This document shows positions 26,461 to 58,495 of a DNA stretch of 64,000 nt, piece after piece (the stretch's first letter is position 1; every line of letters starts with the position of its first letter). This DNA is from Macrostomum lignano (Eukaryota), in the NCBI GenBank assembly GCA_002269645.1, contig NIVC01003928.1:1-64000 (forward strand), written 5' to 3'. The translations under genes and the position numbers were made by a program. Under the pieces are notes generated by a model. It searched no databases. It had not been told where the DNA came from and saw only the letters and a list, made by a program, of their open reading frames with translations.

Positions 26461-28939
26461 TTGAATGCGGACGAACCTGTGCGTGAGCGCACAAAAGAAA
26501 AATCACTTATTGAGAAATCTGTTTGATTTGTTTGAAAACAGATTTAAATGTCGCTGTTCTAATAAATGCTTCATTGTCAATGAAATTTTACTGTACAATT
26601 AAAATACTCGTAGTTTGTCCCAACGGTGCTGCTTGTGTCAGTTAGATGGAGTATGTACAAATTTCACTTTCTCGATAGTGCCGCAGCAACTTACTTTGCC
26701 CTTAGCTGACTGCAGGCAGGCTTGCTTGTTTTAATAATGCCCTAGAAAACAAAACACTTATTGCAATTAAGTTTCAGTTACTGGGAGTTGCAATTTTCTG
26801 AGATCCTATCTCTTTGCTGACCGCCCATCTTCCCAATCAGATGAGCTTCTTTTTTGTTGCTGACTCTGCCCTGCTTTTCTTTCGGCGTTTGCCTTTGCAG
26901 TAAGCTTTGTTTCTCGTTCTAGAATGCTGTCATTTTATACTGTTCTTTAGTTATGTAATAATACTGCTTTGAGTAGAAAAATAATTTGACTATCGAATTA
27001 TAACAGTAATATATTATATTAGTTGCCCAGCAAACTCACATGGTATTTCTCCAAGTCTCTAGTACTGTGGGCGATGTGTCATGCGAGATTTCTTTCCTAA
27101 ATGTTTTGATTGAAACTTTTAGTAAAATTTGTTCTTCCTAGAAGTGTAAATTTTGCCTACTTATGAGTGCTGTGTAGTGCTGTTGTAAATTAATTGATAA
27201 ATAAGGTGATCGTGCCGCCTCTCTTATATTTCACTGAGCTCAGAGTATTACTAGGCTGCTAATTATTTTTTTCAACGTACAAAAATACGACATATACGAG
27301 TACGAGACAAGACTTACTTGACAATGAAGGCAAATCTGTTTGTTATAGAAGAAAACGGTAGCTTATCGATATCAACGTATCTGGAATTTTAGAAAAGTAC
27401 ATATGTAAATTCCAGTTAAGTTTTTATTTAATCATAAAATTTTAAAAAGAATTTTAAATTCTACTTACATATGTGTAATGGTTCCTAGCCAAGTCTTTTC
27501 ATGCCAGGTCATGCATGGAAACTCTTGTGACGTGGCACATTTTGTCTGTGTAGTGCAGGTCTCGTAAATGAATTATATTCGTTTGAACATATGCAGTACC
27601 GCCAGTACGCCTTTTGTCAAAGGGAACTTCTACATGTACCTTTCCGTTAGAATTGGCTCTTCCTCTTGTAGGCCTCAACTTCAGTGTAAACTTTATCCCG
27701 ACTCCCTTGCGCCCGCCTCTCCTCCCCGCTTCCCCCCGCCGCGATAGGAATGTACGCGTGGCCTGGGTAAGGGATTGCCTGGGTCTTGTACACGCTTGTC
27801 CTAACACTTCTGCACTGTACGTGGGTTTATCTTTACGATCCAAGATAAGCAAAATTGTTTTCCAGGAAGGCCTAGTAGTTAGTTTTGGGCCAACTAGTCA
27901 TCGATTTCGACTTTACAGTGACAGTGACACTCAAACATGTGCTAGCAGTCCATGCAGTCATCTTAAGTTTCTTCGTATCTCAGTACATTTCAGTATACCA
28001 GACGATAATTATCATAATTCTAGGAAAAATTTTGCTACATAGTATAGCTGCCCAAACCCAGGCCAATAAGGAAGTCATTTAAAGCCTTAGAGATTAAACG
28101 TTTCCCTCTAATACTCGTCCTCGGTTTTCTCGGGAAATGCAAAGTTTTTCTTTGCCCTTTATTTCTTTGCTCTAAAAGCGCTTCATAAGACTGTGAGAAT
28201 TTCCACCGGAAAACTACCTCACTCAAAGTGTCACTTTACGTTAATGGCCTCCAGTCACTAACTTGAGTCAGTTAATACCCATTCACATATGACAAATAGA
28301 TTAATGCAGCTGACTGAAAACGAGAATTTCAGTTAAAATGGCCGAGGGCACAGGCGGATGTAACCTTAATTTGTTATGTTTCGTGTATAAGTGAAATTGG
28401 AAGCTAATGAATTTAGATGCTAGCTGTTTCTATGCAAAAATCTAAATATACTAAATCTATAAGGTTTGTATGCTTGATTGTAATATTCTAAATCCTTATT
28501 AAATTATTTCATATTTTATAGTAAACACGATGCCAAATGTCAGGATCCTTTCAAGTGTCGATTGGCAGCCCTGTGGAGAACCTCTATCTGTTACTTGTAG
28601 TAGACTTTCTTGATATTGTAAGAAATATTGTAATAAAACGAGAATACCGATTTGAGACCCAATTGTTCTGTTGGATCAGACCATCAGTTCGCATAATTTT
28701 TTAAACTTCTTAGGACACTGCAAATCATTAGATTCCCCGTGTTTGATTAAAAATATGAAAAAATGACATTGATTTTTGAAAGGAGAATCGAAAGACGGTT
28801 CCAATGAATATTTTTTCATTTCAATAGAATTCATTTTTGGAAGTGTCGGGACGCACTTATTGGGCCTGGCCCAACACATTTTTGGTCCTAATAGCACGGG
28901 TCAGTTTATACACGCTTGTCCCAAGAAATGCCTAATGCA

Positions 28940-28992
<53 letters not shown>

Positions 28993-30625: not shown

Positions 30626-30635
30626 GAAGCCGCGG

Positions 30636-33600
30636 TCAAACGTAGGTATTGTTAGTCCGCTCGGCGGCATTCATCTGGGCCAGCTGCTTCAGCGGCAGCA
30701 GTAGAAAGGTGTCCATGTCGCGGTTGTGCTTGCCCAGCGAGTTCACCCGGTAGTGCGCGACCAGCTCCTCCAGGCTGGGGAACGAGGTCGGACTGACGTA
30801 GTCGAAGCCGCACCGGCCGGTCTGCTGCTGGCCGGCGCCCAGCTCCATGAAGATCTTGCAGAAGCGGACACCGCACGGACTGCGGACGGACAGCACTAGG
30901 CTCTCCTCGCCACCTGAGCGAGACGCGTGAATCAGGAAGGTGCCGATTGGCGCATTGTCCAGATGGCGCAGCAGCGGGTCGGCCTTGGTGATCTGCCTGT
31001 CCAGCCAGTCGGCGGGGTCCCACGGCGCCGCGGAGGTCGAACCCACCGGGTCCTCGGCCAGCGACAGTCGCTCGAAGCTGTCGGCGCAGCCGGGGAAGTA
31101 GCCGCCGAGATTGGCGGCGTCCTCGGCGTCCACCGTCTCGCGCAGCACGCCGTACAGGGTCATCAGGATGGCCTTGAGGCGGATGCGCTTCTCCTGGATT
31201 GCGCGAACGTCTCCGCGCATCGTGCGCACCTCGGCCTGCATCACCTGGCTATCGTGCCGGATCCGCTGCGCCTCCTTCTCGGCCGCTTCCTGCCTGGACC
31301 GGTACATCTGCATGCGGCTCACCTGCGGAATGGGCGGCGGGGGTGGCTTTATGGGTTGCCAGCGGTATGCTGCTTGCGGGATCAGGTAGAAACAGGTGAG
31401 GAGAAGGGAGCATAGGGAGAATCCAGATGGGAGCATAGGGAGAATCCAGATGGGATCATAGGGAGAATCCAGATGGGAGCATAGGGAGAATCCAGATGGG
31501 GATCGAGGGAACCCATATGGGGATCAGGGGAGAATCAATATGGGGATTAAGGGAAAATTCCGAGAATACCGATACTCACGATTCCACTCCAATAAACTTA
31601 TCACTCACCTGCGAGTCCCGATTGGTCTTCATGAGCTGTTCCAGAGCACTGCGCCGCTCAATGAGTCTGTCCATCTTGGCGATATTGTTGGTAAGGGTGA
31701 GCACGACCTGCGAGTAGCACTTAGCGCCGCGCTCCGCCTCCAGCTGCTGATCCTTTAGCGTTCCCATAGTAACAATGTTCTCGTCCATCTTTGTAAACAC
31801 GTCGGAGATTTCGCGACCCATTTCTTGGTAGAGGGTCAGCAGCTCCTGCCTCATCTGGGCGGGAAAACCAATTCGAGATGGGATCAATACGACTCATACG
31901 AGCCTCATGCGCCCCATCACTCGATTCTTCCCATCTCCACAATCTTCCCCCTTTCCGTCACTCCAATTCTTCCCCTTTCTCGTCACTCCAATTCTACCCC
32001 TTTCTCGTCATTCCAATTCTTCCCATTCCCGTTACTTCAATTCTTCCTCTTTCCTGTCACCCCCAATTCTTCTCCTTTCTCGTCACTCCAATTCTTCCCC
32101 ATTCTCAAAAAAATAATCTTCCCCCTTTCTCGTCACTCCCAATTCTTCCTCTTTATCGTCACTCCCATTTTTCCCCTTTCTCGACCCTCCAATTCTTCCC
32201 CTTTCCTGTCACTCAAATTCTTCCCTTTTCTCGTCACCCCAATGCTTCCTCTTTCTCGTCACCCCAATTCTTCCCCATTCTCGTCACTCCTAATTCTTCC
32301 CCTTTCTCGTCACCACAATTCTTCCCCTTTCCTGTCACTCAAATTCTTCCCTTTTCTCGTCACCTTAATTCTTCCCCTTTCTCGTAAATCGAATTCTCCC
32401 CTTTCCTGTCACTCAAATTCTTCCCCCTTTCTCGTCCCTACCAAATCTCTCTTTTCTCGTCACTCTAATTTTTCCCCTTTCTCTTAAATGCAATTCTTCC
32501 GCATTCTCTGACTCTAATTCTTCCCCACACCCTGCAACCCAAATTCCTCCCCTACGAGTGAACAGCAAAACACAGATCCCCAGCTCACTTCTTCGCTGTT
32601 CCCCTTGGAGGCAGATTCAGCTGGGCAGCCTGCAAACTTGCTAATGGGATAGAGGAGCAACACGTCCAGGTTGTTATTGTACTCGCGCAGCGAATTGTAG
32701 GTGTAGTGATTGATGACCTGGGCTACCGTGTAGAACTCGGTGGCCCGCTCGGAGAAGCCGTACGTGACCCGGTCGCCGGTCTTGTAGCGCGGATAGATTC
32801 TAATCAGCTTGTTCTCGCCGTCCTTCTTCAGAGTCAGCGTGTAGCCGCCGCTCATGTTGGCGGCGTTGCGCACTAGGAATGAGCCGTCCGGCCGGTTGGC
32901 CAGCACGGCTTGAACCTCCGACTTGGAGATGTCGCCCCAGTACCACGGTTGCTCGGGCAGGGAGATGTGATCCACCTGCGGGATGGCGCAGCGGTTGCTT
33001 TTAGTTGTCAAGCCGGTTTCACTTATGAGCTAGTTGCTAGGCAGTTCTGGGGATTGGATATAATTGGGGTTGGGGTTTGAGATCGGGAATCGGGATAGTG
33101 ATGGGATTTGAGATTGGAAATCAGGACACTGATGGGATTTGAGATTGGGAATCGGGACAGCGATGGGATTTGAGATTGGGAATCGGGACAGTGATGGGAT
33201 TTGAGATTGGGAATCGGGACAGTGATGGGATTTGAGATTGAGAATGTGGATGGGATTTGAGATTGGGAATCTGGATGGGATTTGAGATTGGGAATCATGA
33301 TGGGATTTGAGATTGGGAATCATGATGGGATTTGAGATTGGGAATCTGGACAGTGATGGGATTTGAGATTGAGAATCGGGATGGGATTTGAGATTGGGAA
33401 TCGGGATGGGATTTAAGATTGAGAATCTGGATGGGATTTGAGATTGGGAATCAGGATGGCATTTGAGATTGGAAATCGGGATGGGATTTGAGATTGAGAA
33501 TCTGGATGGGATTTGAGATTGGGAATCATGATGGGATTTGAGATTGGGAATCTGGATGGGATTTGAGATTGGGAATCATGATGGGATTTGAGATTGGGAA

Positions 33601-36600
33601 TCTGGATGGGATTTGAGATTGGGAATCATGATGGGATTTGAGATTGGGAATCAAGATGGGATTTGAGATTGGGAATCTGGATGGGATTTGAGATTGAGAA
33701 TCTGGATGGGATTTGAGATTGGGAATCATGATGGGATTTGAGATTGGGAATCTGGATGGGATTTGAGATTGGGAATCATGATGGGATTTGAGAATGGGAA
33801 TCATGATGGGATTTGAGATTGGGAATCTGGATGGGATTTGAGATTGGGAATCTGGATGGGATTTGAGATTGGGAATCTGGATGGGATTTGAGATTGGGAA
33901 TCTGGATGGGATTTGAGATTGGGAATCTGGATGGGATTTGAGATTGGGAATCTGGATGGGATTTGAGATCAGAAATCTGGATGGGATTTGAGATTGGGAA
34001 TCGGGATGGGATTTGAGATTGGGAATCTGGATGGGATTTGAGATCAGAAATCTGGATGGGATTTGAGATTGGAAATCAGGACACTGATGGGATTTGAGAT
34101 TGGGAATCGGGATGGGATTTGAGATTGGGAATCTGGATGGGATTTGAGATTGGGAATCTAGATGGGATTTGAGATTGGGAATCTGGATGGGATTTGAGAT
34201 TGGGAATCCGGATGGGATTTGAGATTGGGAATCTGGATGGGATTTGAGATCAGAAATCTGGATGGGATTTGAGATTGGGAATCGGGATGGGATTTGAGAT
34301 TGGGAATCTGGATGGGATTTGAGATCAGAAATCTGGATGGGATTTGAGATTGGGAATCATGATGGGATTTGAGATTGGGAATCGGGATGGGATTTGAGAT
34401 TGGGAATCGGGATGGAATTTGAGATTGGGAATTGGGACAGTGATGGGATTTGAGATTGGGAATCGGGATGGGATTTGAGATTGGGAATCGGGATGGGATT
34501 TGAGATTGGGAATCGGGATGGGATTTAGGATTGGGAATCTGGATGGGATTTGGGATTGGGAATCTAGATGGGATTTGGGATTGGGAATCTGGATGGGATT
34601 TGAGATTGGGAATCGGGATGGGATTTGAGATTGGGAATCGGGACAGTGATACGATACGATACAGTAACTGTAGGGTATAGGACCAAGGAAGGCTCACAAC
34701 CACCCCAGGGAGACAGCAGCCAGACTGAGGAACGAACCTGAGACGGGTCGTTAAGCACCAGAAATGAAGGCAGCACGCAGCCCCAGCGGCCGTGGGACAG
34801 CACCCCCTTGGCAACGTCGTGCAATGGCACAACACAAGGCCGACTGTGCTCGCCGGCCACCATCCCGGTCACTCGGGACCAGGCCGGACGGAGCAGCAGC
34901 TGGCCGAAAACGCGCGACCACGAAATGAAATACTGACGGTCGGCGTTTCGAACCCGCCTGAAGATCTGCACAAAGTGGCACATGAGGTGCTGCAGAGTAG
35001 CCCTATGATGGTCGGGGGCCTCCGACAGCAGACGGCGGAGCTCCACGGCCTGCTGATGCAGCTGGCTGGCAGGCAGGTCCATGAGGCGGACGAATCTGCG
35101 CGGGAGGCGAGTGACAGATTCGCTGGGGTGAGAGGGCGACTCTCTGGGATGAGAGGGCGACTCTCTGGGATGAGAGGGCGACTCTCTGGGATGAGAGGGC
35201 GACTCTCTGGGATGAGAGGGCGACTCTCTGGGATGAGAGGGCGACTCTCTGGGATGAGAGGGCGACTCTCTAGGGTAAGAGGGCGAATCTCTAGAATGAG
35301 AGGGCGACTCTCTGGGATGAGAGGGCGACTCTCTGGGATGAGAGGGCGACTCTCTGGGATGAGAGGGCGACTCTCTGGGATGAGAGGGCGACTCGTTGGT
35401 ATGAGAGGGCGACTCTCTGACAGGTAGGAAGCGATTCTCAGACTTGGAACTCTCTGATGCGCCAATGCCAGCCTTCAGTCTCACTTGTCGTAGTGCTGGC
35501 AGGGCAGCAGTGAGGTCGGCAGCTCCTGCAGCCACAGTTTGAGCAGCTGGGCCGCCAACTTGCCGTCCAGTTTATTAAACGCGGCCGGCCCAACTCCGCA
35601 GCCGAAGTCGGCGCGAAGGGCTTCAACGTCGGCGGCGGTCCGCCTGAAACGGTAGAACTGCAGCAGGTCGCCTGGATAAGTGAGGCTCTCCCGCTCCACT
35701 GTGTAAGTGCACAGCCGGACAATATAGGGCACCAGGTGCGAGGCCGCCTCCGGTGCCATGGAGTCGGGCGCGTCGGACAGAGCCGGCTGGTCAGAGTGGG
35801 CCAGGCTGTCGTACACGTTGGTGGAGTCGGCGTAGTTGTCCAGCTTGCGGCGAAAGCTCTCGTCTGGCAGCTGCTGCTCGCCTGCGGCTACCTGCTCATC
35901 AATGGACGCGCCGAACACGATGGACGGCACCATAGGCGGCACGGTGGGTCGGCAGGATTCGTCACCTTCAGCACCGGTTGCCCCCCACCGGTGAAACCTG
36001 GCGCAGTGCCGATGCGCGACCCGGCCGCAGACGGTGCACTGCAGGCCCTGCTGGTAGATGCCCAGCAGCCGGAGCCCGCAAGCTGCGCACTCAGTCTGGT
36101 GTCCGGCAAAGCTGGCCAGCCGCATCCGATGCCCGGCCGGACTGTCCGGATGTCCGAGCCGCCACTCGGTTCCGGCTTTGTCCGCCTCTGGCCAGTCGCG
36201 GTAGCCGGCCAGCAGTTGCTCCAAGGCGGCCGAGATCGCCCGCCGGTGCGGTACATCCTGCATCCGCCAGTCCTTCTCCAGCACCTGGTCCGTGAGACCG
36301 CGGAGGCACGCGCCGCCTGTTCGGAGTTGAAAGGGGCGGCGATGAGGAATCGAGAGTTTGGATTCCGAATTTACAAATCCCAAAAGTGTGGGAATGGTTT
36401 TCAACCCACATGAACTGCAGATTACACCAGATACAGATCCCAAAACAGTAAAGCCATAGATCCCAAAACAGTAAAGCCACAGATCCCGATGAATAAAAGC
36501 CAATCAACAGCAGCCATCAGTTACCCGGGAAGCCCCGCTGGCCGAGATATTTGCAGCAAGAGTCCAAGAACCGGCTGAGGTTGGCAACGCACAGCCACTC

Positions 36601-38076
36601 CAGCACCATGCGGCTGGTCCAGGCTTCCACCAGCACGGGTTCCCAGTGCAAATACAGGTAGTGAGAATCGTCCGGCGGCGGGGCGAAGCCGTCGCAACCG
36701 ACCAGAAGCTGCGACCCGGCGCCCGCCTCGGAGTCAGCAACGTCGCCGTATTTGTCGTCGACATCGCCGGAAGCCGCCGCCACAGCAGCGGCTGTACAGG
36801 ACAGGTGAAAGACGCGCTTGCAGACGGCGCACTGCGCGGCGCCGCAGTTCCACAGATAGTCCTGGCACAGGGTGCAATAGCGCGGGCCGGACACGAACAC
36901 GGTCGGGCCGCCAGGCAGGGCGTGCCGCCGTCGCTCCCGACTGCTGCTGGCCGCGGAGTCGCCACTGCTGCTGTCCGAGAGCTGAGGGCCTGACAAGCCT
37001 GGCATATTGGGATATGGGATCAAAATTGGGGACGTTGCAAACTGGGAAACAGTGGGAATAGGATGGGGATCACAGTGCGAATAGGGTGGGGATCACAGTG
37101 CGAATAGGATGGGGATCACAGTGGGAATAGAATGGGGATCACAGTGCGAATAGGGTGGGGATCACAGTGCGAATAGGATGGGGATCACAGTGGGAATAGG
37201 GTGGGGATCAGTGGGAATTGGGTGGGGATCACAGTGCGAATAGGGTGGGGATCACAGTGGGAATATGGTGGGGATCAGTGGGAATTGGGTGGGGATCACA
37301 GTGCGAATAGGGTGGGGATCACAGTGCGAATAGGATAGGGATCACAGTGGGAATAGGGTGGGGATCACAGTGGGAATAGGGTGGGGATCACAGTGGGAAT
37401 AGGGTGGGGATCACAGTGGGAATATGGTGGGGATCAGTGGGAATAGGGTGGGGATTACAGTGGAAATAGGGTGGGGATTACAGTGGAAATAGGGTCGAGA
37501 TCACAGTGGGAATTGGGTGGGGATCAGAGTGGGAATTGGGTGGGGATCGCACAGTGGGAATTGGGTGGGGATCGCACAGTGGGAATTGGGTGGGGATCGC
37601 ACAGTGGGAATTGGGTGGGGATCGCACAGTGGGAATTGGGTGGGGATCACAGTGGGAATAGTTTGGGGATTACAGTGGAAATAGGATTGGGTTACTGAGT
37701 AAGAGTATTCTGAGTAGCCAGGGTATCTTCAACCAATCAAAACAAGCAAAGAGCACAAAGCAAGGTCTGGAGAGTTGCCAGGATCAAGGAGAGAGAGAGC
37801 ACTCCCGCCCTTACCAGCGTCAGTGGAGGGGTCATCCGCCTGCACCAGCTGCAGATACTTGGTGGGCACCAGGCCCTCCCGATTCTGATAGCGCACCCGG
37901 CAGGTGCCAGGCAGGACTGCGGTGGACACCGAAGACTCCGCAGGTGCCAAGCCAATCAGCTGAGCCCCAGCCTCCAGCACAGAGATGAAGCCAGCGGCCA
38001 CTTCCTCATCGCTAGGAATAAATGGCTGCAGACAGCGATAGACAATGGCTAATGGTTTTGGTGGCTCTGTGGCCAT
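30636..38076 (-). CDS. Class IA PI3-kinase regulatory subunit (p85/PIK3R-like), SH3-C1-SAM-C1-RhoGAP-nSH2-iSH2-cSH2, ~1081 aa
   Basis: Exons 38076-37815, 36998-36525, 36316-35485, 35095-34738, 32975-32589, 31854-31609 and 31322-30636 join in frame. nSH2 PWYWGDISKSEV..PDGSFLVRNA..YTLTLKKDGENKLIRI; coiled-coil iSH2; cSH2 with the SL..HN..MDT.L..P tail typical of p85; two Cys/His C1 motifs; RhoGAP FG.SI..PYIV..C..VE, LLKLWLQELP. Confidence 0.9.
31408..31500. repeat. 23-bp intronic repeat GCATAGGGAGAATCCAGATGGGA
   Basis: Direct inspection. Confidence 0.88.
31925..32490. repeat. Degenerate ~25-bp pyrimidine-rich intronic repeat AATTCTTCCCCTTTCTCGTCACTCC
   Basis: Direct inspection. Confidence 0.85.
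33065..34650. repeat. 25-bp intronic minisatellite GATGGGATTTGAGATTGGGAATCTG
   Basis: Direct inspection; ~1.6 kb. Confidence 0.95.
35128..35420. repeat. 21-bp intronic repeat GGGATGAGAGGGCGACTCTCT
   Basis: Direct inspection; within intron 35096-35484. Confidence 0.93.
37063..37685. repeat. ~23-bp intronic repeat GGGATCACAGTGGGAATAGGGTG
   Basis: Direct inspection. Confidence 0.92.
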
Positions 38077-40348: not shown

Positions 40349-41114
40349 GGGTGCTGGTCACTTCGTCAACTGGCGTTTCGTCAAATGGTTGACGAAGTGA
40401 CTATTTGGCAGGGGTAGGGGTATTTGCTATTGACGAAGTGACCAAAGTCTAGTGGGTGGTCTTACTGATTGGTCAGTTAACGAAGGGACCGAGATCAACG
40501 AACCCCAGTTGACAAAACGAAACAAAAAACTTTGAATAAGTTTACTCGATGGAAGTGGGTTGGCTATTATTTTTTCTTTTCTTTCTTTCCTCGTTCGAAG
40601 TGCATGCCATGTCGAATGCGTTACTCGACGATGCCAAATGCGTATAAATTATTAAGCATTTGTTCAGAAGTCTTAATTGTAGTTCTTAAGGTTAATTTTT
40701 ATTAATTAATTTTAATTACTCAACTGTTTATCATTGTTAATTGTTCTTTTTGAAATAGCTTTTCCTTTGTTGTAATGCAATGAATTTTAATATCGCAAAA
40801 ATTCAAATGTAGAGAATGTAATTAGAAATTTGGACCGACTGCAGCAGCAGTGTTGGTGTGGTACACGATTTAAAATTAATTAGCCTGCTTAATCCGCTTC
40901 ATTCATGTGAGAGTTTACCAGAAAAATTCTTGGCACAGATGCAGTCATGAACATATATACATACTACTGCATTGTATAATACGAGTATGTACGTAATGCA
41001 CAGTTGACGAAGTGACCACGTTTAGAGGTCCACTGATTGGCCAGTTGACGAAGTGACCCGAGGGCAATAGCTTCCCAGTTGAAGAAACGCCAGTTGACGA
41101 TTTGACTAGGATCC
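40349..41114. mobile_element. Non-autonomous MITE (~766 bp), 8-bp TSD GCATTAAA, TIRs starting GG (Merlin-like by TIR/TSD)
   Basis: GCATTAAA at 40341-40348 and 41115-41122. TIR GGGTGCTGGTCACTTCGTCAACTGGCGTTTCGTCAA vs reverse complement GGATCCTAGTCAAATCGTCAACTGGCGTTTCTTCAA. Repeated subterminal GTTGACGAAGTGAC. Confidence 0.8.
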
Positions 41115-42714: not shown

Positions 42715-43674
42715 TCAATGATTAGTGTTTATCATATAATGCTCATAGCAACAAGTCCTCTGCACTTTGAGCGATGCTACTGATGGGAAAAACACTGAGA
42801 GAGGATTCTTGTGCCACTTCCAAGTGCGAAAGCCAAGCTTAAATAGGCCTCGCCAAATCCGAATCAAGCGCGCATAGTCGCTCTTCTTTTTCACGAGTTC
42901 ACTAGTGCGCGATTTGAAGATAAGCTGCTTCACATTCTTCAGGCACCCTTCGTTAAAAGCCTTTTCAAAGCTGGCCCACTCCCAGTGCTCAACGTCGATT
43001 TTCAGTATGTCGATCTTTTTGTTCTCGTAGCCCAGCTCGTAAAACAGCGTGCATAGAGTTCGCATTTTCCAGCCATTGCTGTCCACCTTAGTCTCAGAAG
43101 AAATGCCAATTCGATAGAACCTCGATGTCTTCTTCCTCTGATGGTCGTTCACATTAACCTTGCTTGGATCGAACATGTACACGTTGCAATGATACTTTTC
43201 GGCGAGAGTGTCGTCGTACTCCCAAGCATTGTCGATTCCCAGTGAGAAGGCGACGCACGGCTTGCTCTCCGTGATGTTGAAGGGCCGGATGAAACAGACA
43301 TCCCAGCCTCCATCGTCGGAATTCCCGATGCGGATGCTGTAGGGGCAGCGGACGTGCTGCTGCTCCAAAATGCCAAAGTACATGACCTCAAGCTGAGCGG
43401 GAGTTAGCGAGGCCAGATTCGTCTTGAGAACAGCAGCCGCTCGGTTGAAATCTTTCGCTTCGCGGACATCCAGCCAGGAAGAGTGACTTGCCCACCGCTT
43501 TGAGGCATCTGTTCCTACTTCAGTTCTTTCAACATCATCTGTGGCATCGGCCTTAACTGCGCTGCAGCTCAGGCCGAGTCTTCGATGAATAGTGACAATC
43601 ACGATCAGTGAAGTGATGAATAATGTAACAGAGAGAAATGCACTGGGCAGAGAGACCGTATTGGAGACCCTCAT
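42715..43674 (-). CDS. METTL24-like class I SAM-dependent methyltransferase (Methyltransf_22 type) with N-terminal membrane anchor, 319 aa, intronless
   Basis: Uninterrupted ORF; hydrophobic N-terminal helix; motifs RIGNSDDGGWDVC, CVAFSLGI..WEYD, CNVYMFDP, IDILKIDVEHWEW, VKQL. Confidence 0.85.
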   Translation of the reverse strand: MRVSNTVSLPSAFLSVTLFITSLIVIVTIHRRLGLSCSAVKADATDDVERTEVGTDASKRWASHSSWLDVREAKDFNRAAAVLKTNLASLTPAQLEVMYFGILEQQHVRCPYSIRIGNSDDGGWDVCFIRPFNITESKPCVAFSLGIDNAWEYDDTLAEKYHCNVYMFDPSKVNVNDHQRKKTSRFYRIGISSETKVDSNGWKMRTLCTLFYELGYENKKIDILKIDVEHWEWASFEKAFNEGCLKNVKQLIFKSRTSELVKKKSDYARLIRIWRGLFKLGFRTWKWHKNPLSVFFPSVASLKVQRTCCYEHYMINTNH

Positions 43675-49459: not shown

Positions 49460-50813
49460 AACGCTTTTCATGCTACTTATAAAGCATAAGTAGTGTGTAA
49501 GGAGTTTTTTGATACTTAAATTTAACGAAGAAATGCATATAAACCTAAACCTAAACATGCGTACATATGTGAAATATTAAAATAAGCTTTATTTAATATG
49601 TATTATAATTACTAATTAATAATCACCAATTACTGTAAGAAAAAAATCTTTGGCAATATATTTCCCAGACGTACCTCAAATTGTGTATTTTTAATTATCA
49701 TGTATTTTTAATTGTACATAAAAATGAACTTTTAAGTCTTTAAATATTTGTTTTTTTAAACTCGAGAGAAGATTCGTTTTATTCGTATTGAACTTATTTC
49801 AAAAGGCATTTCTTCATAGATTTCATAGAAAACTTGTTTACATCTTTTTTTCATCAGTCCATTATGAAACGTTGTATTTTTTCGATGACAGCTCAAGTGA
49901 GCACACTGCACCCAATAACTATCTCCAGCCATTTCTGGGGGCCTCGCAACTGTTCGAGGCATTCTTTCTCGGATTAAACAGGATTAGAAGTTACAAGCTA
50001 TTCAAGAGACCACAGCTGGGCTCGCGGGGCCACTCAACCGAGACGGGGCCATCAAAAGTGGCTTTGTGAGGCTGGGCTGCACTGCTGCATTGGTCTGGCG
50101 ACTTTTGTGTCTGTATTATGCAAAATTTCTATTCAATATGACAGTTGAGCTGGCTGCTCCGCCATTGGCCCGGCAGGGCTGGGCTGGCACAGAATATGAG
50201 AAGGTGGGAGCGCCGGCGTCTCAGCCCAGCGGGGGGTTTAAATTCAAGCAAGGCGCCCCAAAGCTCATTAGCGGCCAACTTGCAGCAAAGCATTCGATAG
50301 ACAGAGAGGCTCTTTCCCTCTCGTACCCAGTTGAAGTGCCGCGCGCTTTACTCGTAATTGACTCAACAGAGCTGCTCAGCTTAATCCCTTGACAACCTAC
50401 TTCACACTCTGGTACAGCCTGGGCCCCATTCGGTACTGCCGGAACTCCAGCAAGCGTTGGCTTAACCAGCTCAGAAGGATAAGAAGAAACAACGAAGGGA
50501 TCCAACAGCTTTACGAAGGCAGGTAGGAAACTTCCGGTTCTGTGCACCCCGAGTCCTTTCCGAAGTATTCTCTCTCGAAGACATTCCAAATCTGCATCAG
50601 GCGGCTGGCCGGTTTCGCAATGGCAGCCTCAAACTGGCCAATTCTCATTTTCCCAGCTCTCAATGGAGCGGCCAAACAACACGCACAGGTAGAGGCAGTG
50701 AGTAAATGAGAGGCGCTGGAATTTCTGCCAGGCAGCCGCCCCACCCCAAGTTTGCCAACTGAGTCCGCACTGTTTGTTTGGCCTGCTTGCCAAATGGAAG
50801 AAGTTGAAGAGGC

Positions 50814-50846
<33 letters not shown>

Positions 50847-53800
50847 ACGCACCGGGCACTTGTTGGTACGGTATACAATGGTGGGCACTTATTTTGCAAT
50901 TTTTTTTGACACACGAAAACACGCACATACACACAGTGCAATGACCTATTAAGTATTTTTAGCATTTAAATGATGAAAAAAAGCATACATTGAAATAAAA
51001 AAGCACGTCCCATACTAATAGTATGATCTATTGAAAGTGAAGGAATAGCATATCATCGTGTAACTATATTGTCCTCAGTCGAGCGAATTCAGCATTACTT
51101 GAAATACAAGTCTTCGTTGAAGCCAATCCACATGAAGGAAAAACTAGTTACAAGCAGTCTATTTACCTTTACCTTTACTAATACGCTATAATGCTGTACG
51201 CAATATGCCTGACTAATATGAATAAAAAATTCAATTACACTTGCGCTTAGGAAAAAACCTAAAATTGACAGTGAAACTGAAAAACTGAAACGCAAAGATT
51301 AGTTAAGCAGATTAAACAAAAAATTCCGGTCGAGCGAGAAAACAGGAGTCTCGTTATTTAGAGCACTCTGGCATCCAGCATTACGCTTGCAGATTATAAA
51401 TTAGCTGCTCTCCTGAGTTCGAAGCTGACAGGTCCGTTGCAGTCGGCATCGATTGAGTCGACTGCCAATTTAGTCAATGGGTTTCGTTTCTTCTTTTCAC
51501 TGGAACCTGTGGTGGGATTAGCAAAAGATCGATTTCGCATATCTGTTTAGTGATTTCAAGGACGACAAAATCATTCTTCTCTGCATGTCAGCTCCAGAAG
51601 ATGCTAGTTTGCTTGCAGCTTTCTGTAGGAGCATTCTACTTTAGTAAAGTGTACCCATTCTAAAATAAGCTGTTTTTAATATGTCCCAACAAGTCTCTGT
51701 GCAGTGTGTCATCCGTTTGCCCATCAATTTGTTCTGGAGCCCTTTATTAATTGAGTTCTTTAGGTGACTTAACAAATGCGGAAAAAACTAGACACACACA
51801 CACAGTGGCCCAACACTTCGTGTCCCAATAATTGCTAGGAAAAATGCACTGCAGTGTTTAAGCATCTCCTCTGAGGGGCCCTTGCATGCATAGCTATAGA
51901 ATCTGCTAAGACCCGATCTGAGAGTTAAAAGTACAAAAAGTTATAACGCTTCTAGACACGAAAACGAATGCAGCCACAGCATGAACTAACCTTTTATTGA
52001 AGCTTCTGCTTTAAATACTTTGATGCTGTGAAGCATTCTGGCATCTAGCATTACTCTCGTAGACTATTAGCTGCTCTCCTGAGTTCGAAGCTGACAGGTC
52101 CGTTGCAGTCGGCATCGATTGAGTCGACTGCCAATTTAGTCAATGGGTTTCGTTTCTTCTTTTCACTGGAACCTGTGGTGGGATTAGCAAAAGATCGATT
52201 TCGCATATCTGTTTAGTGATTTCAAGGACGACAAAATCATTCTTCTCTGCATGTCAGCTCCAGAAGATGCTAGTTTGCTTGCAGCTTTCTGTAGGAGCAT
52301 TCTACTTTAGTAAAGTGTACCCATTCTAAAATAAGCTGTTTTTAATATGTCCCAACAAGTCTCTGTGCAGTGTGTCATCCGTTTGCCCATCAATTTGTTC
52401 TGGAGCCCTTTATTAATTGAGTTCTTTAGGTGACTTAACAAATGCGGAAAAAACTAGACACACACACACAGTGGCCCAACACTTCGTGTCCCAATAATTG
52501 CTAGGAAAAATGCACTGCAGTGTTTAAGCATCTCCTCTGAGGGGCCCTTGCATGCATAGCTATAGAATCTGCTAAGACCCGATCTGAGAGTTAAAAGTAC
52601 AAAAAGTTATAACGCTTCTAGACACGAAAACGAATGCAGCCACAGCATGAACTAACCTTTTATTGAAGCTTCTGCTTTAAATACTTTGATGCTGTGAAGC
52701 ATTCTGGCATCTAGCATTACTCTCGTAGACTATTAGCTGCTCTCCTGAGTTCGAAGCTGACAGGTCCGTTGCAGTCGGCATCGATTGAGTCGACTGCCAA
52801 TTTAGTCAATGGGTTTCGTTTCTTCTTTTCACTGGAACCTGTGGTGGGATTAGCAAAAGATCGATTTCGCATATCTGTTTAGTGATTTCAAGGACGACAA
52901 AATCATTCTTCTCTGCATGTCAGCTCCAGAAGATGCTAGTTTGCTTGCAGCTTTCTGTAGGAGCATTCTACTTTAGTAAAGTGTACCCATTCTAAAATAA
53001 GCTGTTTTTAATATGTCCCAACAAGTCTCTGTGCAGTGTGTCATCCGTTTGCCCATCAATTTGTTCTGGAGCCCTTTATTAATTGAGTTCTTTAGGTGAC
53101 TTAACAAATGCGGAAAAAACTAGACACACACACACAGTGGCCCAACACTTCGTGTCCCAATAATTGCTAGGAAAAATGCACTGCAGTGTTTAAGCATCTC
53201 CTCTGAGGGGCCCTTGCATGCATAGCTATAGAATCTGCTAAGACCCGATCTGAGAGTTAAAAGTACAAAAAGTTATAACGCTTCTAGACACGAAAACGAA
53301 TGCAGCCACAGCATGAACTAACCTTTTATTGAAGCTTCTGCTTTAAATACTTTGATGCTGTGAAGCATTCTGGCATCTAGCATTACTCTCGTAGACTATT
53401 AGCTGCTCTCCTGAGTTCGAAGCTGACAGGTCCGTTGCAGTCGGCATCGATTGAGTCGACTGCCAATTTAGTCAATGGGTTTCGTTTCTTCTTTTCACTG
53501 GAACCTGTGGTGGGATTAGCAAAAGATCGATTTCGCATATCTGTTTAGTGATTTCAAGGACGACAAAATCATTCTTCTCTGCATGTCAGCTCCAGAAGAT
53601 GCTAGTTTGCTTGCAGCTTTCTGTAGGAGCATTCTACTTTAGTAAAGTGTACCCATTCTAAAATAAGCTGTTTTTAATATGTCCCAACAAGTCTCTGTGC
53701 AGTGTGTCATCCGTTTGCCCATCAATTTGTTCTGGAGCCCTTTATTAATTGAGTTCTTTAGGTGACTTAACAAATGCGGAAAAAACTAGACACACACACA

Positions 53801-56800
53801 CAGTGGCCCAACACTTCGTGTCCCAATAATTGCTAGGAAAAATGCACTGCAGTGTTTAAGCATCTCCTCTGAGGGGCCCTTGCATGCATAGCTATAGAAT
53901 CTGCTAAGACCCGATCTGAGAGTTAAAAGTACAAAAAGTTATAACGCTTCTAGACACGAAAACGAATGCAGCCACAGCATGAACTAACCTTTTATTGAAG
54001 CTTCTGCTTTAAAGACTTTGATGCTGTGAAGCATTCTGGCATCTAGCATTACTCTCGTAGACTATTAGCTGCTCTCCTGAGTTCGAAGCTGACAGGTCCG
54101 TTGCAGTCGGCATCGATTGAGTCGACTGCCAATTTAGTCAATGGGTTTCGTTTCTTCTTTTCACTGGAACCTGTGGTGGGATTAGCAAAAGATCGATTTC
54201 GCATATCTGTTTAGTGATTTCAAGGACGACAAAATCATTCTTCTCTGCATGTCAGCTCCAGAAGATGCTAGTTTGCTTGCAGCTTTCTGTAGGAGCATTC
54301 TACTTTAGTAAAGTGTACCCATTCTAAAATAAGCTGTTTTTAATATGTCCCAACAAGTCTCTGTGCAGTGTGTCATCCGTTTGCCCATCAATTTGTTCTG
54401 GAGCCCTTTATTAATTGAGTTCTTTAGGTGACTTAACAAATGCGGAAAAAACTAGACACACACACACAGTGGCCCAACACTTCGTGTCCCAATAATTGCT
54501 AGGAAAAATGCACTGCAGTGTTTAAGCATCTCCTCTGAGGGGCCCTTGCATGCATAGCTATAGAATCTGCTAAGACCCGATCTGAGAGTTAAAAGTACAA
54601 AAAGTTATAACGCTTCTAGACACGAAAACGAATGCAGCCACAGCATGAACTAACCTTTTATTGAAGCTTCTGCTTTAAATACTTTGATGCTGTGAAGCAT
54701 TCTGGCATCTAGCATTACTCTCGTAGACTATTAGCTGCTCTCCTGAGTTCGAAGCTGACAGGTCCGTTGCAGTCGGCATCGATTGAGTCGACTGCCAATT
54801 TAGTCAATGGGTTTCGTTTCTTCTTTTCACTGGAACCTGTGGTGGGATTAGCAAAAGATCGATTTCGCATATCTGTTTAGTGATTTCAAGGACGACAAAA
54901 TCATTCTTCTCTGCATGTCAGCTCCAGAAGATGCTAGTTTGCTTGCAGCTTTCTGTAGGAGCATTCTACTTTAGTAAAGTGTACCCATTCTAAAATAAGC
55001 TGTTTTTAATATGTCCCAACAAGTCTCTGTGCAGTGTGTCATCCGTTTGCCCATCAATTTGTTCTGGAGCCCTTTATTAATTGAGTTCTTTAGGTGACTT
55101 AACAAATGCGGAAAAAACTAGACACACACACACACAGTGGCCCAACACTTCGTGTCCCAATAATTGCTAGGAAAAATGCACTGCAGTGTTTAAGCATCTC
55201 CTCTGAGGGGCCCTTGCATGCATAGCTATAGAATCTGCTAAGACCCGATCTGAGAGTTAAAAGTACAAAAAGTTATAACGCTTCTAGACACGAAAACGAA
55301 TGCAGCCACAGCATGAACTAACCTTTTATTGAAGCTTCTGCTTTAAAGACTTTGATGCTGTGAAGCATTCTGGCATCTAGCATTACTCTCGTAGACTATT
55401 AGCTGCTCTCCTGAGTTCGAAGCTGACAGGTCCGTTGCAGTCGGCATCGATTGAGTCGACTGCCAATTTAGTCAATGGGTTTCGTTTCTTCTTTTCACTG
55501 GAACCTGTGGTGGGATTAGCAAAAGATCGATTTCGCATATCTGTTTAGTGATTTCAAGGACGACAAAATCATTCTTCTCTGCATGTCAGCTCCAGAAGAT
55601 GCTAGTTTGCTTGCAGCTTTCTGTAGGAGCATTCTACTTTAGTAAAGTGTACCATTCTAAAATAAGCTGTTTTTAATATGTCCCAACAAGTCTCTGTGCA
55701 GTGTGTCATCCGTTTGCCCATCAATTTGTTCTGGAGCCCTTTATTAATTGAGTTCTTTAGGTGACTTAACAAATGCGGAAAAAACTAGACACACACACAC
55801 AGTGGCCCAACACTTCGTGTCCCAATAATTGCTAGGAAAAATGCACTGCAGTGTTTAAGCATCTCCTCTGAGGGGCCCTTGCATGCATAGCTATAGAATC
55901 TGCTAAGACCCGATCTGAGAGTTAAAAGTACAAAAAGTTATAACGCTTCTAGACACGAAAACGAATGCAGCCACAGCATGAACTAACCTTTTATTGAAGC
56001 TTCTGCTTTAAAGACTTTGATGCTGTGAAGCATTCTGGCATCTAGCATTACTCTCGTAGACTATTAGCTGCTCTCCTGAGTTCGAAGCTGACAGGTCCGT
56101 TGCAGTCGGCATCGATTGAGTCGACTGCCAATTTAGTCAATGGGTTTCGTTTCTTCTTTTCACTGGAACCTGTGGTGGGATTAGCAAAAGATCGATTTCG
56201 CATATCTGTTTAGTGATTTCAAGGACGACAAAATCATTCTTCTCTGCATGTCAGCTCCAGAAGATGCTAGTTTGCTTGCAGCTTTCTGTAGGAGCATTCT
56301 ACTTTAGTAAAGTGTACCATTCTAAAATAAGCTGTTTTTAATATGTCCCAACAAGTCTCTGTGCAGTGTGTCATCCGTTTGCCCATCAATTTGTTCTGGA
56401 GCCCTTTATTAATTGAGTTCTTTAGGTGACTTAACAAATGCGGAAAAAACTAGACACACACACACAGTGGCCCAACACTTCGTGTCCCAATAATTGCTAG
56501 GAAAAATGCACTGCAGTGTTTAAGCATCTCCTCTGAGGGGCCCTTGCATGCATAGCTATAGAATCTGCTAAGACCCGATCTGAGAGTTAAAAGTACAAAA
56601 AGTTATAACGCTTCTAGACACGAAAACGAATGCAGCCACAGCATGAACTAACCTTTTATTGAAGCTTCTGCTTTAAATACTTTGATGCTGTGAAGCATTC
56701 TGGCATCTAGCATTACTCTCGTAGACTATTAGCTGCTCTCCTGAGTTCGAAGCTGACAGGTCCGTTGCAGTCGGCATCGATTGAGTCGACTGCCAATTTA

Positions 56801-58460
56801 GTCAATGGGTTTCGTTTCTTCTTTTCACTGGAACCTGTGGTGGGATTAGCAAAAGATCGATTTCGCATATCTGTTTAGTGATTTCAAGGACGACAAAATC
56901 ATTCTTCTCTGCATGTCAGCTCCAGAAGATGCTAGTTTGCTTGCAGCTTTCTGTAGGAGCATTCTACTTTAGTAAAGTGTACCCATTCTAAAATAAGCTG
57001 TTTTTAATATGTCCCAACAAGTCTCTGTGCAGTGTGTCATCCGTTTGCCCATCAATTTGTTCTGGAGCCCTTTATTAATTGAGTTCTTTAGGTGACTTAA
57101 CAAATGCGGAAAAAACTAGACACACACACACAGTGGCCCAACACTTCGTGTCCCAATAATTGCTAGGAAAAATGCACTGCAGTGTTTAAGCATCTCCTCT
57201 GAGGGGCCCTTGCATGCATAGCTATAGAATCTGCTAAGACCCGATCTGAGAGTTAAAAGTACAAAACTTATAATTTTTGTGGTTGGACACGTAGGCTATT
57301 GAGTGTCAATGGATTCAGACGAAATGTCAAGTTTTACTCAAAGCTTTTACAGCTTACTGGTTAAAGTCGACGGATCCTTTGGCAATTGCGCCACATGGCA
57401 GTTGATCAAAGGTGATATACCTGAAGTAAAGGTAGGTACTGCTTAGCAGGAGCAGTATTTTTATAGCATTTAAATATAAATGCTTCTTGTTTCCGACAAA
57501 GTTTTTTAATACCACTTACATGTTTCTCGCTGTGCCATTCCATGCTGTTCTTTCCATACCATGGTGACTCGGGTGCCATGGCAGAGGCAGAGTTGACCAT
57601 TGATTTCAGCATAGCGAGTACATGCCAATTTAGTTTTACCGTACGTTTGCGGGGTGGCGTCAATAATAGACCAAAATAAAAGTACACTTAACTAGCAAGG
57701 GGACTCTGGTAAATTGGAGCCATGTACACAGGGGGTAGGGCTTAGTCCTAACATGTACGGGGTAAGTCCTAATATGAGTGGGCTTTTGTAAACGACACTC
57801 TAGCACACAGCCCCAACAATTTATAGAATATCGAATGCGCGCAGCAGTCAATAGCATGAGTCCTAACAAGAGTGGGCTGTTGTATTCAACACTGCAACAC
57901 TGTCCTAACAATTTAGTTCGTGTAGAGTACTGATGCCCATCACAGTCAGAAGTACATGTAAGCCCTTGTCATTTCTTTAGGTTTATCTCCATCCAGAACC
58001 ATCCTTTGACAATAAAATACCCTTAAAAGTGTTTTGCTATGCTTTGCTTTGTATGTATTTTAATGTATGCTATGTATTTACGTCTTGTAACAAAGACTGC
58101 AGCAAATGAATGCGCTTGAAATCTACTATTAGTAAAAATATGAGAAAAAACCAATAAAAATATGCGGGAGCAGATTAGCCATTTCAGTGTCCCAATAGTG
58201 ATTTGGTCGAATTTTGTATCATTTTTCCTTATTGGGACGCCAGTTTTTGCTTAATTATGGACTCAGAAAGTAAAATTATTAAAAATGAGTTGCACCATCA
58301 AAAAGAGGCTGTCGAGCTGAATCCATAGAGTATTTTTTTGAGCTGCTATTGTAAGTTTTTTGGAAGTGTTGGACGGACTTGATGGGACAGTCCCAACATT
58401 TTTTTTGGCCCAACAGTGCGGGTCCCGTTGTACGCGTATGGCCCAACAAATGCCCCGTGC

Positions 58461-58462: not shown

Positions 58463-58495
<33 letters not shown>

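What the first reader, a model, noticed from the sequence alone, without database searches (positions are those of the whole stretch)
27040..57600. Both elements carry homologous spliced minus-strand exons of an unrecognised protein
Seen in element A: exon 27545-27469 (TKCATSQEFPCMTWHEKTWLGTITH, gtaagt donor), then a 63-nt phase 2-2 exon 27380-27318 (IYVDIDKLPFSSITNRFAFIV). Seen in element B: an exon ending at 57520 (..HHGMERTAWNGTARN, gtaagt donor), then a 63-nt phase 2-2 exon 57420-57358 (MYITFDQLPCGAIAKGSVDFN). The second exon has the same length and phases in both, and the two exons share the pattern E[KR]T.W.GT...[IM]Y[VI]..D.LP, although the DNA is not obviously alignable. Element A also has another clean open exon near 27137-27040 (EEQILLKVSIKTFRKEISHDTSPTVLETWRNT). 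Inference: the family encodes an intron-containing protein (transposase fragment or TnpA-like accessory DNA-binding protein) that the ORF track misses.
Basis: partly seen in the sequence, partly recalled or inferred. Interest (0 to 1): 0.7.

Follow-up and report, generated by a model that had tools for sequence, protein, structure and literature searches.

The report
Shared mini-exons in two transposon-like elements
Two old, related transposon-like DNA elements in this animal genome window keep the same pair of short spliced coding exons near one end, most likely the leftover start of the element family's own gene, but the protein matches nothing known and neither copy holds a complete gene.

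Summary
Among all exon-like candidates in the window, this pair is the only one of 2,512 same-phase pairs with an in-register score of at least 35 (it scores 49). None of 263,728 simulated pairs exceeds 40. Similarity is limited to the exons and sits in codon positions 1 and 2; the intron and flanks do not align.

The two loci are diverged copies of one TIR-like element family: A at 23339-28937 and B at 50853-58461. Both have related left and right ends. A terminal motif (GGCAYTTNTTGG / CAWTTNTTGGGAC) occurs nowhere else in the 64 kb and is amplified in their internal tandem arrays. All four ends abut the window's only long (CA)n runs.

Only about 28-35 codons are shared. No further shared exon, transposase or DNA-binding domain was found, and no database relative. 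A's third "exon" is out of frame as drawn.

Best reading: these are internally rearranged, non-autonomous elements that retain the first two coding exons of an unidentified family gene. The "transposase / TnpA-like" label is unsupported. Interest is modest.

The parts
23283..23338 (+). Left flanking (CA)28 of element A
   Evidence: One of only four long (CA)n runs in the window, all at element ends.
23339..23440 (+). L terminus of element A (…GTGCACGA GGCACTTATTGG…), related to the L end of B
   Evidence: It is 65-72% identical to 50853-50950, with the terminal motif on the + strand at 23350.
23955..24212 (-). 38-bp minisatellite inside element A; each unit carries the terminal motif (GAATTGTTGGGAC) on the minus strand
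24384..26468 (-). Long-period tandem array of element A (units of 657 and 639 nt, about 3.2 copies); three terminal-motif copies per unit on the minus strand
27040..27137 (-). Open and donor-closed (gtgagt), but out of frame with exon 2 unless the weak acceptor at 27097 is used. No counterpart in B. Doubtful.
27318..27380 (-). A exon 2: 63 nt, phase 2-2, (I)YVDIDKLPFSSITNRFAFIV, bounded by ccag| and |gtaagt
27381..27468 (-). A intron 1: 88 nt, gtaagt…ttccag, GC 0.18 against 0.43 and 0.33 in the flanking exons; branch-point-like cttaac
27469..27596 (-). First in-frame ATG at 27512-27510: MTWHEKTWLGTITH
28740..28937 (+). R terminus of element A, related to the R end of B. Terminal motif on the minus strand at 28921, an internal + copy at 28852, and a hairpin at 28860-28874.
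28938..28991 (+). Right flanking (CA)n of element A
50812..50852 (+). Left flanking (CA)n of element B
50853..50950 (+). L terminus of element B (…ACGCACCG GGCACTTGTTGG…)
51400..57282 (-). 666-bp tandem array of element B (about 8.8 units, most copies 100% identical over the compared 300-nt stretches); one terminal-motif copy (CAATTATTGGGAC) and one (CA)6 per unit
57358..57420 (-). B exon 2: 63 nt, phase 2-2, (M)YITFDQLPCGAIAKGSVDFN, bounded by tcag| and |gtaagc
57421..57519 (-). B intron 1: 99 nt, gtaagt…cttcag, GC 0.32 against 0.49 and 0.46 in the flanking exons
57520..57606 (-). B exon 1 open frame. First in-frame ATG at 57557-57555: MERTAWNGTARN
58262..58461 (+). R terminus of element B; terminal motif on the minus strand at 58443
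58462..58493 (+). Right flanking (CA)n of element B

Best explanation
A (23339-28937) and B (50853-58461) are two old, diverged copies of one TIR-type mobile-element family. Both are structurally non-autonomous.

Each copy has imperfect terminal inverted repeats (RYGCAY..GGCAYTTNTTGG). The same roughly 13-nt motif is amplified many times in internal tandem arrays, and each copy has a (CA)n run at both ends. This fits either insertion into (CA)n targets or (CA)n as an intrinsic part of the ends.

Both copies keep the same small coding segment about 0.85-1.4 kb inside the R end (distance from the R end to exon 1), transcribed inward. It consists of a start codon, about 12-14 codons, a phase-2 GT-AG intron of 88 or 99 nt, and a 63-nt exon. 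I read this as the retained 5' end (first two coding exons) of the family's own gene. That gene was kept under protein-level selection in the autonomous masters while the two lineages diverged. In these copies the rest of the gene has been lost or displaced by the arrays.

Shown here: homology of the loci, exclusivity of the motif, consensus splice signals, and amino-acid-level conservation.

Inferred: mobility, transcription and splicing, that the ATG is the true start, and that a full-length gene exists elsewhere in the genome.
For: The loci are related:
- R ends align over 138-195 nt at 64-79% identity, E = 2e-15 to 1.8e-29.
- L ends are 65-72% identical.
- R and L occur nowhere else in the window.
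- Homology stops at the (CA)n on both sides.

The termini are element-like:
- GGCAYTTNTTGG occurs 14 times against 3.5 expected (0 of 100 shuffles reach 14). All copies are inside A or B: + strand at both left ends, - strand at both right ends.
- CAWTTNTTGGGAC occurs 27 times against 1 expected. All copies are in A or B and all are on the minus strand, including every array unit.
- The four termini align at the same offset from the (CA)n.
- All four (CA)n runs of 14 or more units in the window lie at the four ends.

The exons are homologous and coding-like:
- In-register score 49, unique among 2,512 real pairs and above all 263,728 null pairs.
- BLASTP E = 2e-5.
- Codon-position identity 11/14/4; the other two frames give 2 and 0 identical residues.
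- pN 0.41 against pS 0.86.
- DNA alignability is found only in the exons (z = 2.2 and 1.5); the intron and flanks are at chance.
- The introns are strongly AT-rich relative to the exons in both copies.
- The method recovers a true paralogous exon pair, the tandem PTP domains, as a positive control.

The copies are non-autonomous: no domain in any open frame and no other shared exon.
Against: - Only two copies can be seen, so mobility and family status are inferred.
- The TIR alignment on its own is only about 3 SD above shuffles.
- No clear target-site duplication is visible: AAAC/AAAC in A, AATC/AAAC in B, both ambiguous within (CA)n.
- The shared coding stretch is very short (about 28 ungapped codons).
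- The codon-position pattern partly follows from choosing the alignment by protein score.
- There is no expression evidence, no protein or domain match, no superfamily assignment and no autonomous copy.
- All four donors are phase 2, so the TAA inside GTAAG is in frame. The tidy open-frame ends at donors are therefore partly automatic.
- The two array units (639-657 nt and 666 nt) are not alignable with each other apart from the motif.
Confidence: 0.55

Rival explanations
1. Ancient local duplication of a non-mobile host locus. In this reading a small host gene, or the 5' exons of one, was duplicated together with adjoining repeats, with breakpoints at (CA)n microsatellites. The two exon pairs would then be paralogous host exons, not transposon-borne sequence.
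For: - Only two copies are seen, both in one 64-kb window and in the same orientation.
- The shared parts are collinear.
- There is no transposase anywhere.
- Microsatellites can mediate rearrangements (general knowledge).
Against: - Inverted orientation of the terminal motif at the two ends of both copies, at the same offset from the (CA)n.
- The motif is amplified internally, as with subterminal binding sites.
- Homology ends exactly at the (CA)n on all four sides.
- Conservation is uneven: the termini and exons are kept while everything else is unalignable. That is typical of transposon subfamilies that diverged while active.
- Both copies are AT-rich islands in GC-rich surroundings.
Confidence: 0.17
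2. Chance resemblance. Two unrelated open stretches that happen to end in GTAAG share a weak peptide pattern, and the reader noticed it after scanning many possibilities.
For: - Exon 2 alone gives only 17.7 bits in tblastn and ranks among chance hits.
- The DNA local alignment is not significant, p = 0.11.
- In the looser whole-window test, 2 of 150,000 sampled junction-peptide pairs reached the same score.
- BLASTP E = 2e-5 multiplied by about 2,500 candidate pairs gives about 0.05.
- Phase-2 GTAAG donors automatically close open frames.
Against: - The in-register score of 49 exceeds all 263,728 null pairs (maximum 40) and every other real pair.
- Second-exon length and phases are identical, whereas only 5 same-length pairs exist in the whole window.
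- The pair lies at collinear positions, on the same strand, inside two loci that are independently shown to be homologous.
- Both copies show the same exon/intron GC contrast.
Confidence: 0.08
3. A captured (transduplicated) fragment of a host gene carried by the element family, for instance a piece of a ligand-gated ion-channel extracellular domain, rather than the family's own gene.
For: - A profile of the two peptides finds only 5-HT3A receptor chains in the PDB. The aligned stretch lies just after the Cys-loop (TSWLHTIQDINISLWRLPEKVKSDRSVFMN), E = 0.45-1.4.
- Non-autonomous elements are known to carry host gene fragments (general knowledge, e.g. Pack-MULEs).
Against: - The match is not significant.
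- Neither peptide alone hits these receptors.
- Pfam Neur_chan_LBD is not found even at E <= 10.
- Both Cys-loop cysteines are absent.
- No WxPD, Cys-loop, GEW or M1 motif exists elsewhere in either element.
- No parent gene is present in the window.
Confidence: 0.07
4. A complete very small gene (a micropeptide of about 35-45 residues) carried by the element. It would be translated from the conserved ATG and end soon after the 63-nt exon.
For: - The first in-frame ATG is at equivalent positions in both copies.
- If the second donor is not used, both frames stop at once (…FIVK*, …DFNQ*).
- No further conserved exon exists.
Against: - The immediate stop is an automatic consequence of a phase-2 GTAAG donor.
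- There is no expression or polyadenylation evidence.
- The C-terminal half of exon 2 is poorly conserved.
- Upstream out-of-frame ATGs are present.
Confidence: 0.06

Closest known systems
Non-autonomous class II (TIR) DNA transposons with repeated subterminal motifs, such as internally deleted Ds/dSpm-type derivatives of Ac and En/Spm (from general knowledge)
   Same: - Short imperfect terminal inverted repeats.
- The terminal motif is repeated many times inside the element.
- Copies keep the ends and the first exons of the family gene but lack the rest.
- The termini are better conserved than the interior.
   Different: - The termini do not start with CACTA or hAT-type sequences.
- No clear target-site duplication.
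- No transposase or TnpA homology was detected.
- The motif copies are organised as long-period (about 650 nt) and 38-bp tandem arrays, all in one orientation.
- The host is an animal, and no autonomous partner is known.
Microsatellite-targeting non-autonomous elements: SaTar, Micron and MuTAnT, which are Mutator-like elements of plants (PMC5907723, PMC4486113)
   Same: - The element is flanked on both sides by the same microsatellite.
- The copies are non-autonomous.
- Homology ends at the microsatellite.
   Different: - At least the MuTAnT family targets (TA)n, and these elements are short, whereas here the repeat is (CA)n.
- These elements are 5.6-7.6 kb and carry large arrays and a spliced coding remnant.
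- MULE-type long TIRs and 9-10-bp duplications were not demonstrable.
Tetris, a foldback-type transposon of Drosophila virilis whose internal tandem repeats seeded satellite DNA (PMC4079207)
   Same: - An apparently non-autonomous element with internal tandem repeats derived from its terminal regions.
- The repeats expand into kb-size arrays. B's 666-bp array has 8.8 near-identical units.
   Different: - Tetris repeats (about 220 bp) lie within long inverted terminal repeats.
- Here all the arrays have one orientation and the TIRs are short.
- The Tetris abstract describes no conserved spliced exons.

Membership tests
Class II TIR DNA transposon (non-autonomous copy) | Terminal inverted repeats at both ends | tested here: met
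   - The motif GGCAYTTNTTGG is on the + strand at both left ends and the - strand at both right ends, at the same offset from the flanks.
- Pairwise TIR alignments are only about 3 SD above shuffles, so this is met but weakly.
Class II TIR DNA transposon (non-autonomous copy) | Target-site duplication of fixed length | tested here: inconclusive
   The flanks are (CA)n on both sides. Possible 4-nt AAAC/AAAC in A and AATC/AAAC in B, which cannot be told apart from microsatellite sequence.
Class II TIR DNA transposon (non-autonomous copy) | Multiple copies with conserved ends and unrelated flanks | tested here: met
   There are two copies in the window. R and L are conserved at 64-79%, and the sequence beyond the (CA)n is unrelated. 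The genome-wide copy number could not be tested.
Class II TIR DNA transposon (non-autonomous copy) | Transposase encoded by the family (autonomous member) | tested here: not met
   No transposase or DNA-binding domain in any open frame of either element. An autonomous member elsewhere in the genome could not be searched for.
Class II TIR DNA transposon (non-autonomous copy) | Evidence of mobility (empty sites, insertion polymorphism) | not testable with these tools
   The source genome and its relatives are not in any accessible collection.
   The termini read GTGCAC…/GCGCAC…, not CACTA.
   27 motif copies, all confined to the two elements.
   No Pfam family at E <= 10, no protein sharing three 5-residue words, and no relevant PDB hit.
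Microsatellite-targeting non-autonomous MULEs (SaTar/Micron/MuTAnT) | The same microsatellite on both flanks | tested here: met
   The window's four (CA)n runs of 14 or more units lie at the four element ends. There are no (TG)n runs and no other long dinucleotide runs. The repeat here is (CA)n; MuTAnT, for one, targets (TA)n.
Microsatellite-targeting non-autonomous MULEs (SaTar/Micron/MuTAnT) | MULE-type long TIRs and 9-10-bp duplications; relation to a MuDR transposase | tested here: inconclusive
   The TIRs are only about 20-30 nt. Any duplication is hidden in the microsatellite. No transposase is available to compare.
Spliced protein-coding gene | Consensus GT-AG introns and an open frame across the junction | tested here: met
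   - gtaagt donors, pyrimidine-rich cag acceptors and branch-like sites.
- The frame is open across the junction in both copies.
Spliced protein-coding gene | Protein-level conservation between copies | tested here: met
   Met for about 28 codons only: in-register score 49, codon-position identity 11/14/4 in the 20-codon core, pN 0.41 against pS 0.86.
Spliced protein-coding gene | Complete reading frame from start to stop with plausible length | tested here: inconclusive
   There is a conserved first ATG, but no shared downstream exon. The candidate continuations differ between A and B.
Spliced protein-coding gene | Transcription and splicing observed | not testable with these tools
   No RNA data are available for this unidentified organism.
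Cys-loop ligand-gated ion channel (captured fragment) | Cys-loop signature and a match to the ligand-binding-domain profile | tested here: not met
   - The only match is a profile hit at E = 0.45.
- The cysteines are absent.
- There is no Pfam hit and no other hallmark motif.

The most novel reading that the evidence does not exclude
The two exons are the conserved N-terminus of a so far undescribed protein encoded by an animal DNA-transposon family. That family recognises the GGCAYTTNTTGGG motif and inserts specifically into (CA)n microsatellites. It would be a new transposon lineage whose autonomous copies, with a multi-exon gene, lie elsewhere in this genome.
Probability: 0.15. Interest if true: 0.6.

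Novelty: new member of a known kind. Interest (0 to 1): 0.3.

Why it matters
If this reading holds, the pair gives a handle on an unannotated mobile-element family in a poorly sampled animal lineage.

- The family has a precise terminal and subterminal motif, an apparent association with (CA)n, and a peptide tag (M..E[KR]T.W.GT...[IM]Y[VI]..D.LP, split by a phase-2 intron). These can be used to find autonomous copies and identify the protein.
- It is a clean example of terminal-motif segments of an element expanding into 0.65-kb satellite-like arrays. B's units are almost identical, so that expansion is recent.
- In method, it shows that very short homologous exons invisible to BLAST can be validated by anchoring the alignment on the splice junction.

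It does not change any general picture. Non-autonomous elements that keep terminal exons and grow internal arrays are well known.

Tried and rejected
**Database and family searches**
- Pfam on the peptides and on ten open frames of the elements: nothing.
- Word-indexed search of 5.8 billion proteins with the two-peptide alignment: no candidate.
- PDB: only a non-significant 5-HT3A profile match. I followed it up and rejected it.
- Rfam and tRNA scans of the window: nothing.
- Metagenome scan with the best-conserved R block: 0 hits. I did not use the second scan because shorter patterns would give only chance hits.

**Identifying the organism**
- Exact-ORF look-ups for three window ORFs: not on record.
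- Search with the SH2 exon: no hit at E <= 1e-5.
- The methyltransferase-like ORF gives only 35% identity to pearl-oyster proteins.
- The organism remains unidentified.

**Comparing the two elements**
- DNA alignment of the exon regions is not significant by itself.
- The two long-period array units share nothing beyond the ~13-nt motif. "Homologous arrays" is rejected, although both carry the motif.
- No further conserved exon pair was found, whether by same length and phase, by translated self-comparison, or by frame-compatible continuation.

**Controls**
- The reversed-sequence null was unusable because identical array copies dominate it. I replaced it with Markov simulations.
- I first took the codon-position pattern as strong proof of coding. 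It does exclude neutral DNA homology, but it is partly circular as evidence against chance, so I weighted it down.
Full report
**What the window is**

The 64-kb window is animal-type nuclear DNA.
- It holds SH3 and SH2 exons of a PI3K-p85-like gene on the minus strand (38076 down to 30636).
- Tandem protein-tyrosine-phosphatase domain exons lie on the plus strand.
- There is a single-exon Methyltransf_22 ORF and a malate-dehydrogenase-like exon.
- It is unusually rich in minisatellites, with about 35 arrays of period 12-58.
- The organism could not be identified. Exact-ORF look-ups failed, and the best protein relatives are pearl-oyster proteins at only 35% identity.

**Checking the observation**

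- A: open frame ending at 27469, then gtaagt. An 88-nt intron ends in ttccag. The 63-nt exon 27380-27318 follows, then gtaagt.
- B: open frame ending at 57520, then gtaagt. A 99-nt intron ends in cttcag. The 63-nt exon 57420-57358 follows, then gtaagc.

Three corrections apply.
2. A's exon-1 acceptor at 27546 is weak. That frame is open from 27596.
   - In both copies the first in-frame ATG lies just upstream of the conserved tryptophan: A at 27512-27510 (MTWHEKTW…) and B at 57557-57555 (MERTAW…).
   - These may therefore be first coding exons.
3. A's third "exon" (27137-27040) is out of frame with exon 2 and reads straight into a stop.
   - It fits only with a weak acceptor at 27097, and it has no counterpart in B.

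**Is the similarity more than chance?**

Ordinary searches do not show it.
- tblastn gives 17.7 bits for exon 2 alone, among many chance hits.
- The best DNA local alignment is just the donor consensus, p = 0.11.

Joined across the intron, the picture changes.
- The peptides score 54 against a shuffle null of 21 +/- 4.4, maximum 47 of 2,000.
- BLASTP gives E = 2e-5 for the single comparison.

- There are 139 non-repetitive candidates.
- They give 2,512 same-phase pairs and only five pairs with the same exon length.
No other pair reaches 35, and the other four same-length pairs score 8 or less.
- Twenty Markov-simulated windows gave 263,728 pairs with a maximum of 40.
- In a looser version of the test, the best pair in the window was a true paralogous exon pair, the two phosphatase domains. 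The method therefore finds real cases.

I put the window-wide chance probability between about 1e-3 (in-register test) and 5e-2 (BLASTP E-value times the number of pairs). It is much lower once the independent evidence below is added.

**The two loci are related elements**

- A 138-195-nt piece to the right of each exon pair is 64-79% identical (28740-28937 vs 58262-58461).
- An 85-120-nt piece on the far left is 65-72% identical (23339-23440 vs 50853-50950).
- Neither piece occurs elsewhere in the window. Homology stops at a (CA)n run on all four sides.
- The four ends, read from outside inward, align at the same offset from the (CA)n: …GTGCACGA·GGCACTTATTGG, …ACGCACCG·GGCACTTGTTGG, …GTGCATTA·GGCATTTCTTGGG and …GCGCACGG·GGCATTTGTTGGG.
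- The motif GGCAYTTNTTGG occurs 14 times in the window against 3.5 expected (0 of 100 shuffles reach 14). All copies are inside the two loci, on the + strand at both left ends and the - strand at both right ends.
- The extended motif CAWTTNTTGGGAC occurs 27 times against 1 expected, again only inside the two loci and always on the minus strand.
  - Seven copies lie in A's 38-bp minisatellite.
  - Three lie in each unit of A's 639-657-nt array.
  - One lies in each unit of B's 666-nt array.
- Every (CA)n run of six or more units in the window lies at or in these loci. The four long runs (28, 24, 14 and 14 units) are exactly at the four ends, and there are no (TG)n runs at all.
- Both loci are AT-rich islands in GC-rich surroundings.

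This is the architecture of a TIR-type mobile element with repeated subterminal motifs and internal arrays derived from them. Such an element either inserted into (CA)n or carries (CA)n at its ends. The pairwise TIR alignments are only about 3 SD above shuffles, and no clear target-site duplication is visible. Mobility is therefore inferred, not shown.

**The nature of the exon conservation**

- In the 20-codon core (W…I), identity by codon position is 11/14/4. The other two frames give 2 and 0 identical residues.
- Over 28 codons, pN is 0.41 and pS is 0.86, which is saturated.
- At the DNA level only the exons are even weakly alignable (z = 2.2 and 1.5). The intron, the 75 nt downstream and the 150 nt upstream are at chance.
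- Both introns are far more AT-rich than their exons: 0.18 against 0.43/0.33 in A, and 0.32 against 0.49/0.46 in B.

Together these results exclude neutral DNA homology. They fit sequence that stayed under protein-level selection while everything else except the termini diverged beyond recognition.

Two cautions apply.
- An alignment chosen by protein score will always show low third-position identity.
- Phase-2 GTAAG donors always put TAA in frame, so the neat open-frame ends are partly automatic.

**What the protein is**

Unknown.
- Pfam finds nothing, even at E <= 10.
- No protein among 5.8 billion shares even three 5-residue words with either peptide.
- The exhaustive search tool does not accept spliced peptides.
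- A PDB profile search returned only 5-HT3A receptor chains at E = 0.45-1.4, aligned just after the Cys-loop. This lead failed every follow-up:
  - neither single peptide gives a hit;
  - there is no Neur_chan_LBD match;
  - both cysteines are missing;
  - no other receptor motif occurs in the elements.
- No open frame in either element has a transposase or DNA-binding domain.
- No further exon pair is shared.

**Most likely explanation**

A and B are non-autonomous, internally rearranged copies from two diverged subfamilies of one element family. Both retain the first two coding exons of the family's own gene near the R end.
- The termini would have been conserved because transposition needs them.
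- The exons would have been conserved because the autonomous masters needed the protein.
- The interior has been replaced or expanded by motif-bearing arrays.

B's array, whose units are almost all identical, is a recent expansion. It ends only about 75 nt from exon 2.

Rivals are an ancient local duplication of a host locus, chance, a captured host-gene fragment, and a complete micropeptide gene. The repeated subterminal motifs do resemble En/Spm-type organisation, but the termini are not CACTA and no homology supports the label.

**Comparison with known systems**

Three known kinds are the nearest.
- Internally deleted class II elements that keep their ends and first exons (general knowledge).
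- Microsatellite-targeting non-autonomous Mutator-like elements of plants: SaTar, Micron and MuTAnT (PMC5907723, PMC4486113).
- Tetris, whose terminal tandem repeats seeded satellite arrays (PMC4079207).

The present elements differ in several ways.
- They are flanked by (CA)n.
- Their arrays have long periods and a single orientation.
- They carry a spliced coding remnant.

I rate this as a new member of a known kind, of modest interest. The decisive tests need the source genome (copy census, dN/dS, empty sites) and RNA data.

Noticed in passing
window 40349-41114: A separate MITE-like element in the AT-rich island at 38-42 kb. It has 40-nt inverted arms (83% complementary) and eight copies of an 18-nt motif (CCAGTTGACGAAGTGACC) clustered at both ends in opposite orientations. 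It has no ORF and is unrelated to elements A and B.
   Followed up: partly
window about 3100-10450, + strand: Receptor-type protein-tyrosine-phosphatase gene with two tandem PTP domains. The paralogous exon pairs 3165/3288 vs 6967/7149 (…NAS.ID / …DFW+M…) and 5264-5425 vs 10253-10414 have conserved intron positions. Its introns are filled with minisatellites.
   Followed up: partly
window 30636-38076, - strand: PI3K p85-like adaptor gene with few introns. It has an SH3-like exon (37729-38076), an N-SH2 exon (32631-32957), and one exon with a coiled-coil plus C-SH2 (30636-31436). It is only distantly similar to human p85 (E = 4e-9), and its introns hold 23-25-bp minisatellite arrays of 0.6-1.5 kb.
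   Followed up: partly
window 61933-62931, - strand: Malate-dehydrogenase-like open frame (VAILGACGAVGQPLALMLK…LALYD…) that runs into a 21-bp minisatellite (CTDPTP repeats). By eye, part of the substrate-binding arginine motif looks altered. It may be a divergent paralogue or a pseudogene.
   Followed up: no
whole window: Extreme density of minisatellites: about 35 arrays of period 12-58 nt, many 0.3-1.5 kb, with strong local GC and AT skew. They create many long spurious ORFs in several frames.
   Followed up: partly
window 42715-43674, - strand: Complete single-exon ORF (319 aa) with an N-terminal hydrophobic segment and a Methyltransf_22 domain (E = 1.2e-13). The best database relatives are pearl-oyster (Pinctada) proteins at 34-35% identity, so close relatives of the source organism are not in the collection.
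   Followed up: yes
window 22314-22796, - strand: Open frame with a weak Headcase N-terminal (HECA_N) match (E = 0.2; …KLVCSNAHC…). It may be the first coding exon of the gene downstream of element A.
   Followed up: no
window 55398-56362 within the 666-bp array: In two of the nine B-array units one compared 300-nt stretch is about 90% identical to the reference copy, and in one unit another stretch is 69% identical. There are also small indels (periods 668 and 665), while almost all other compared stretches are 100% identical. This suggests recent amplification or homogenisation of one variant.
   Followed up: partly
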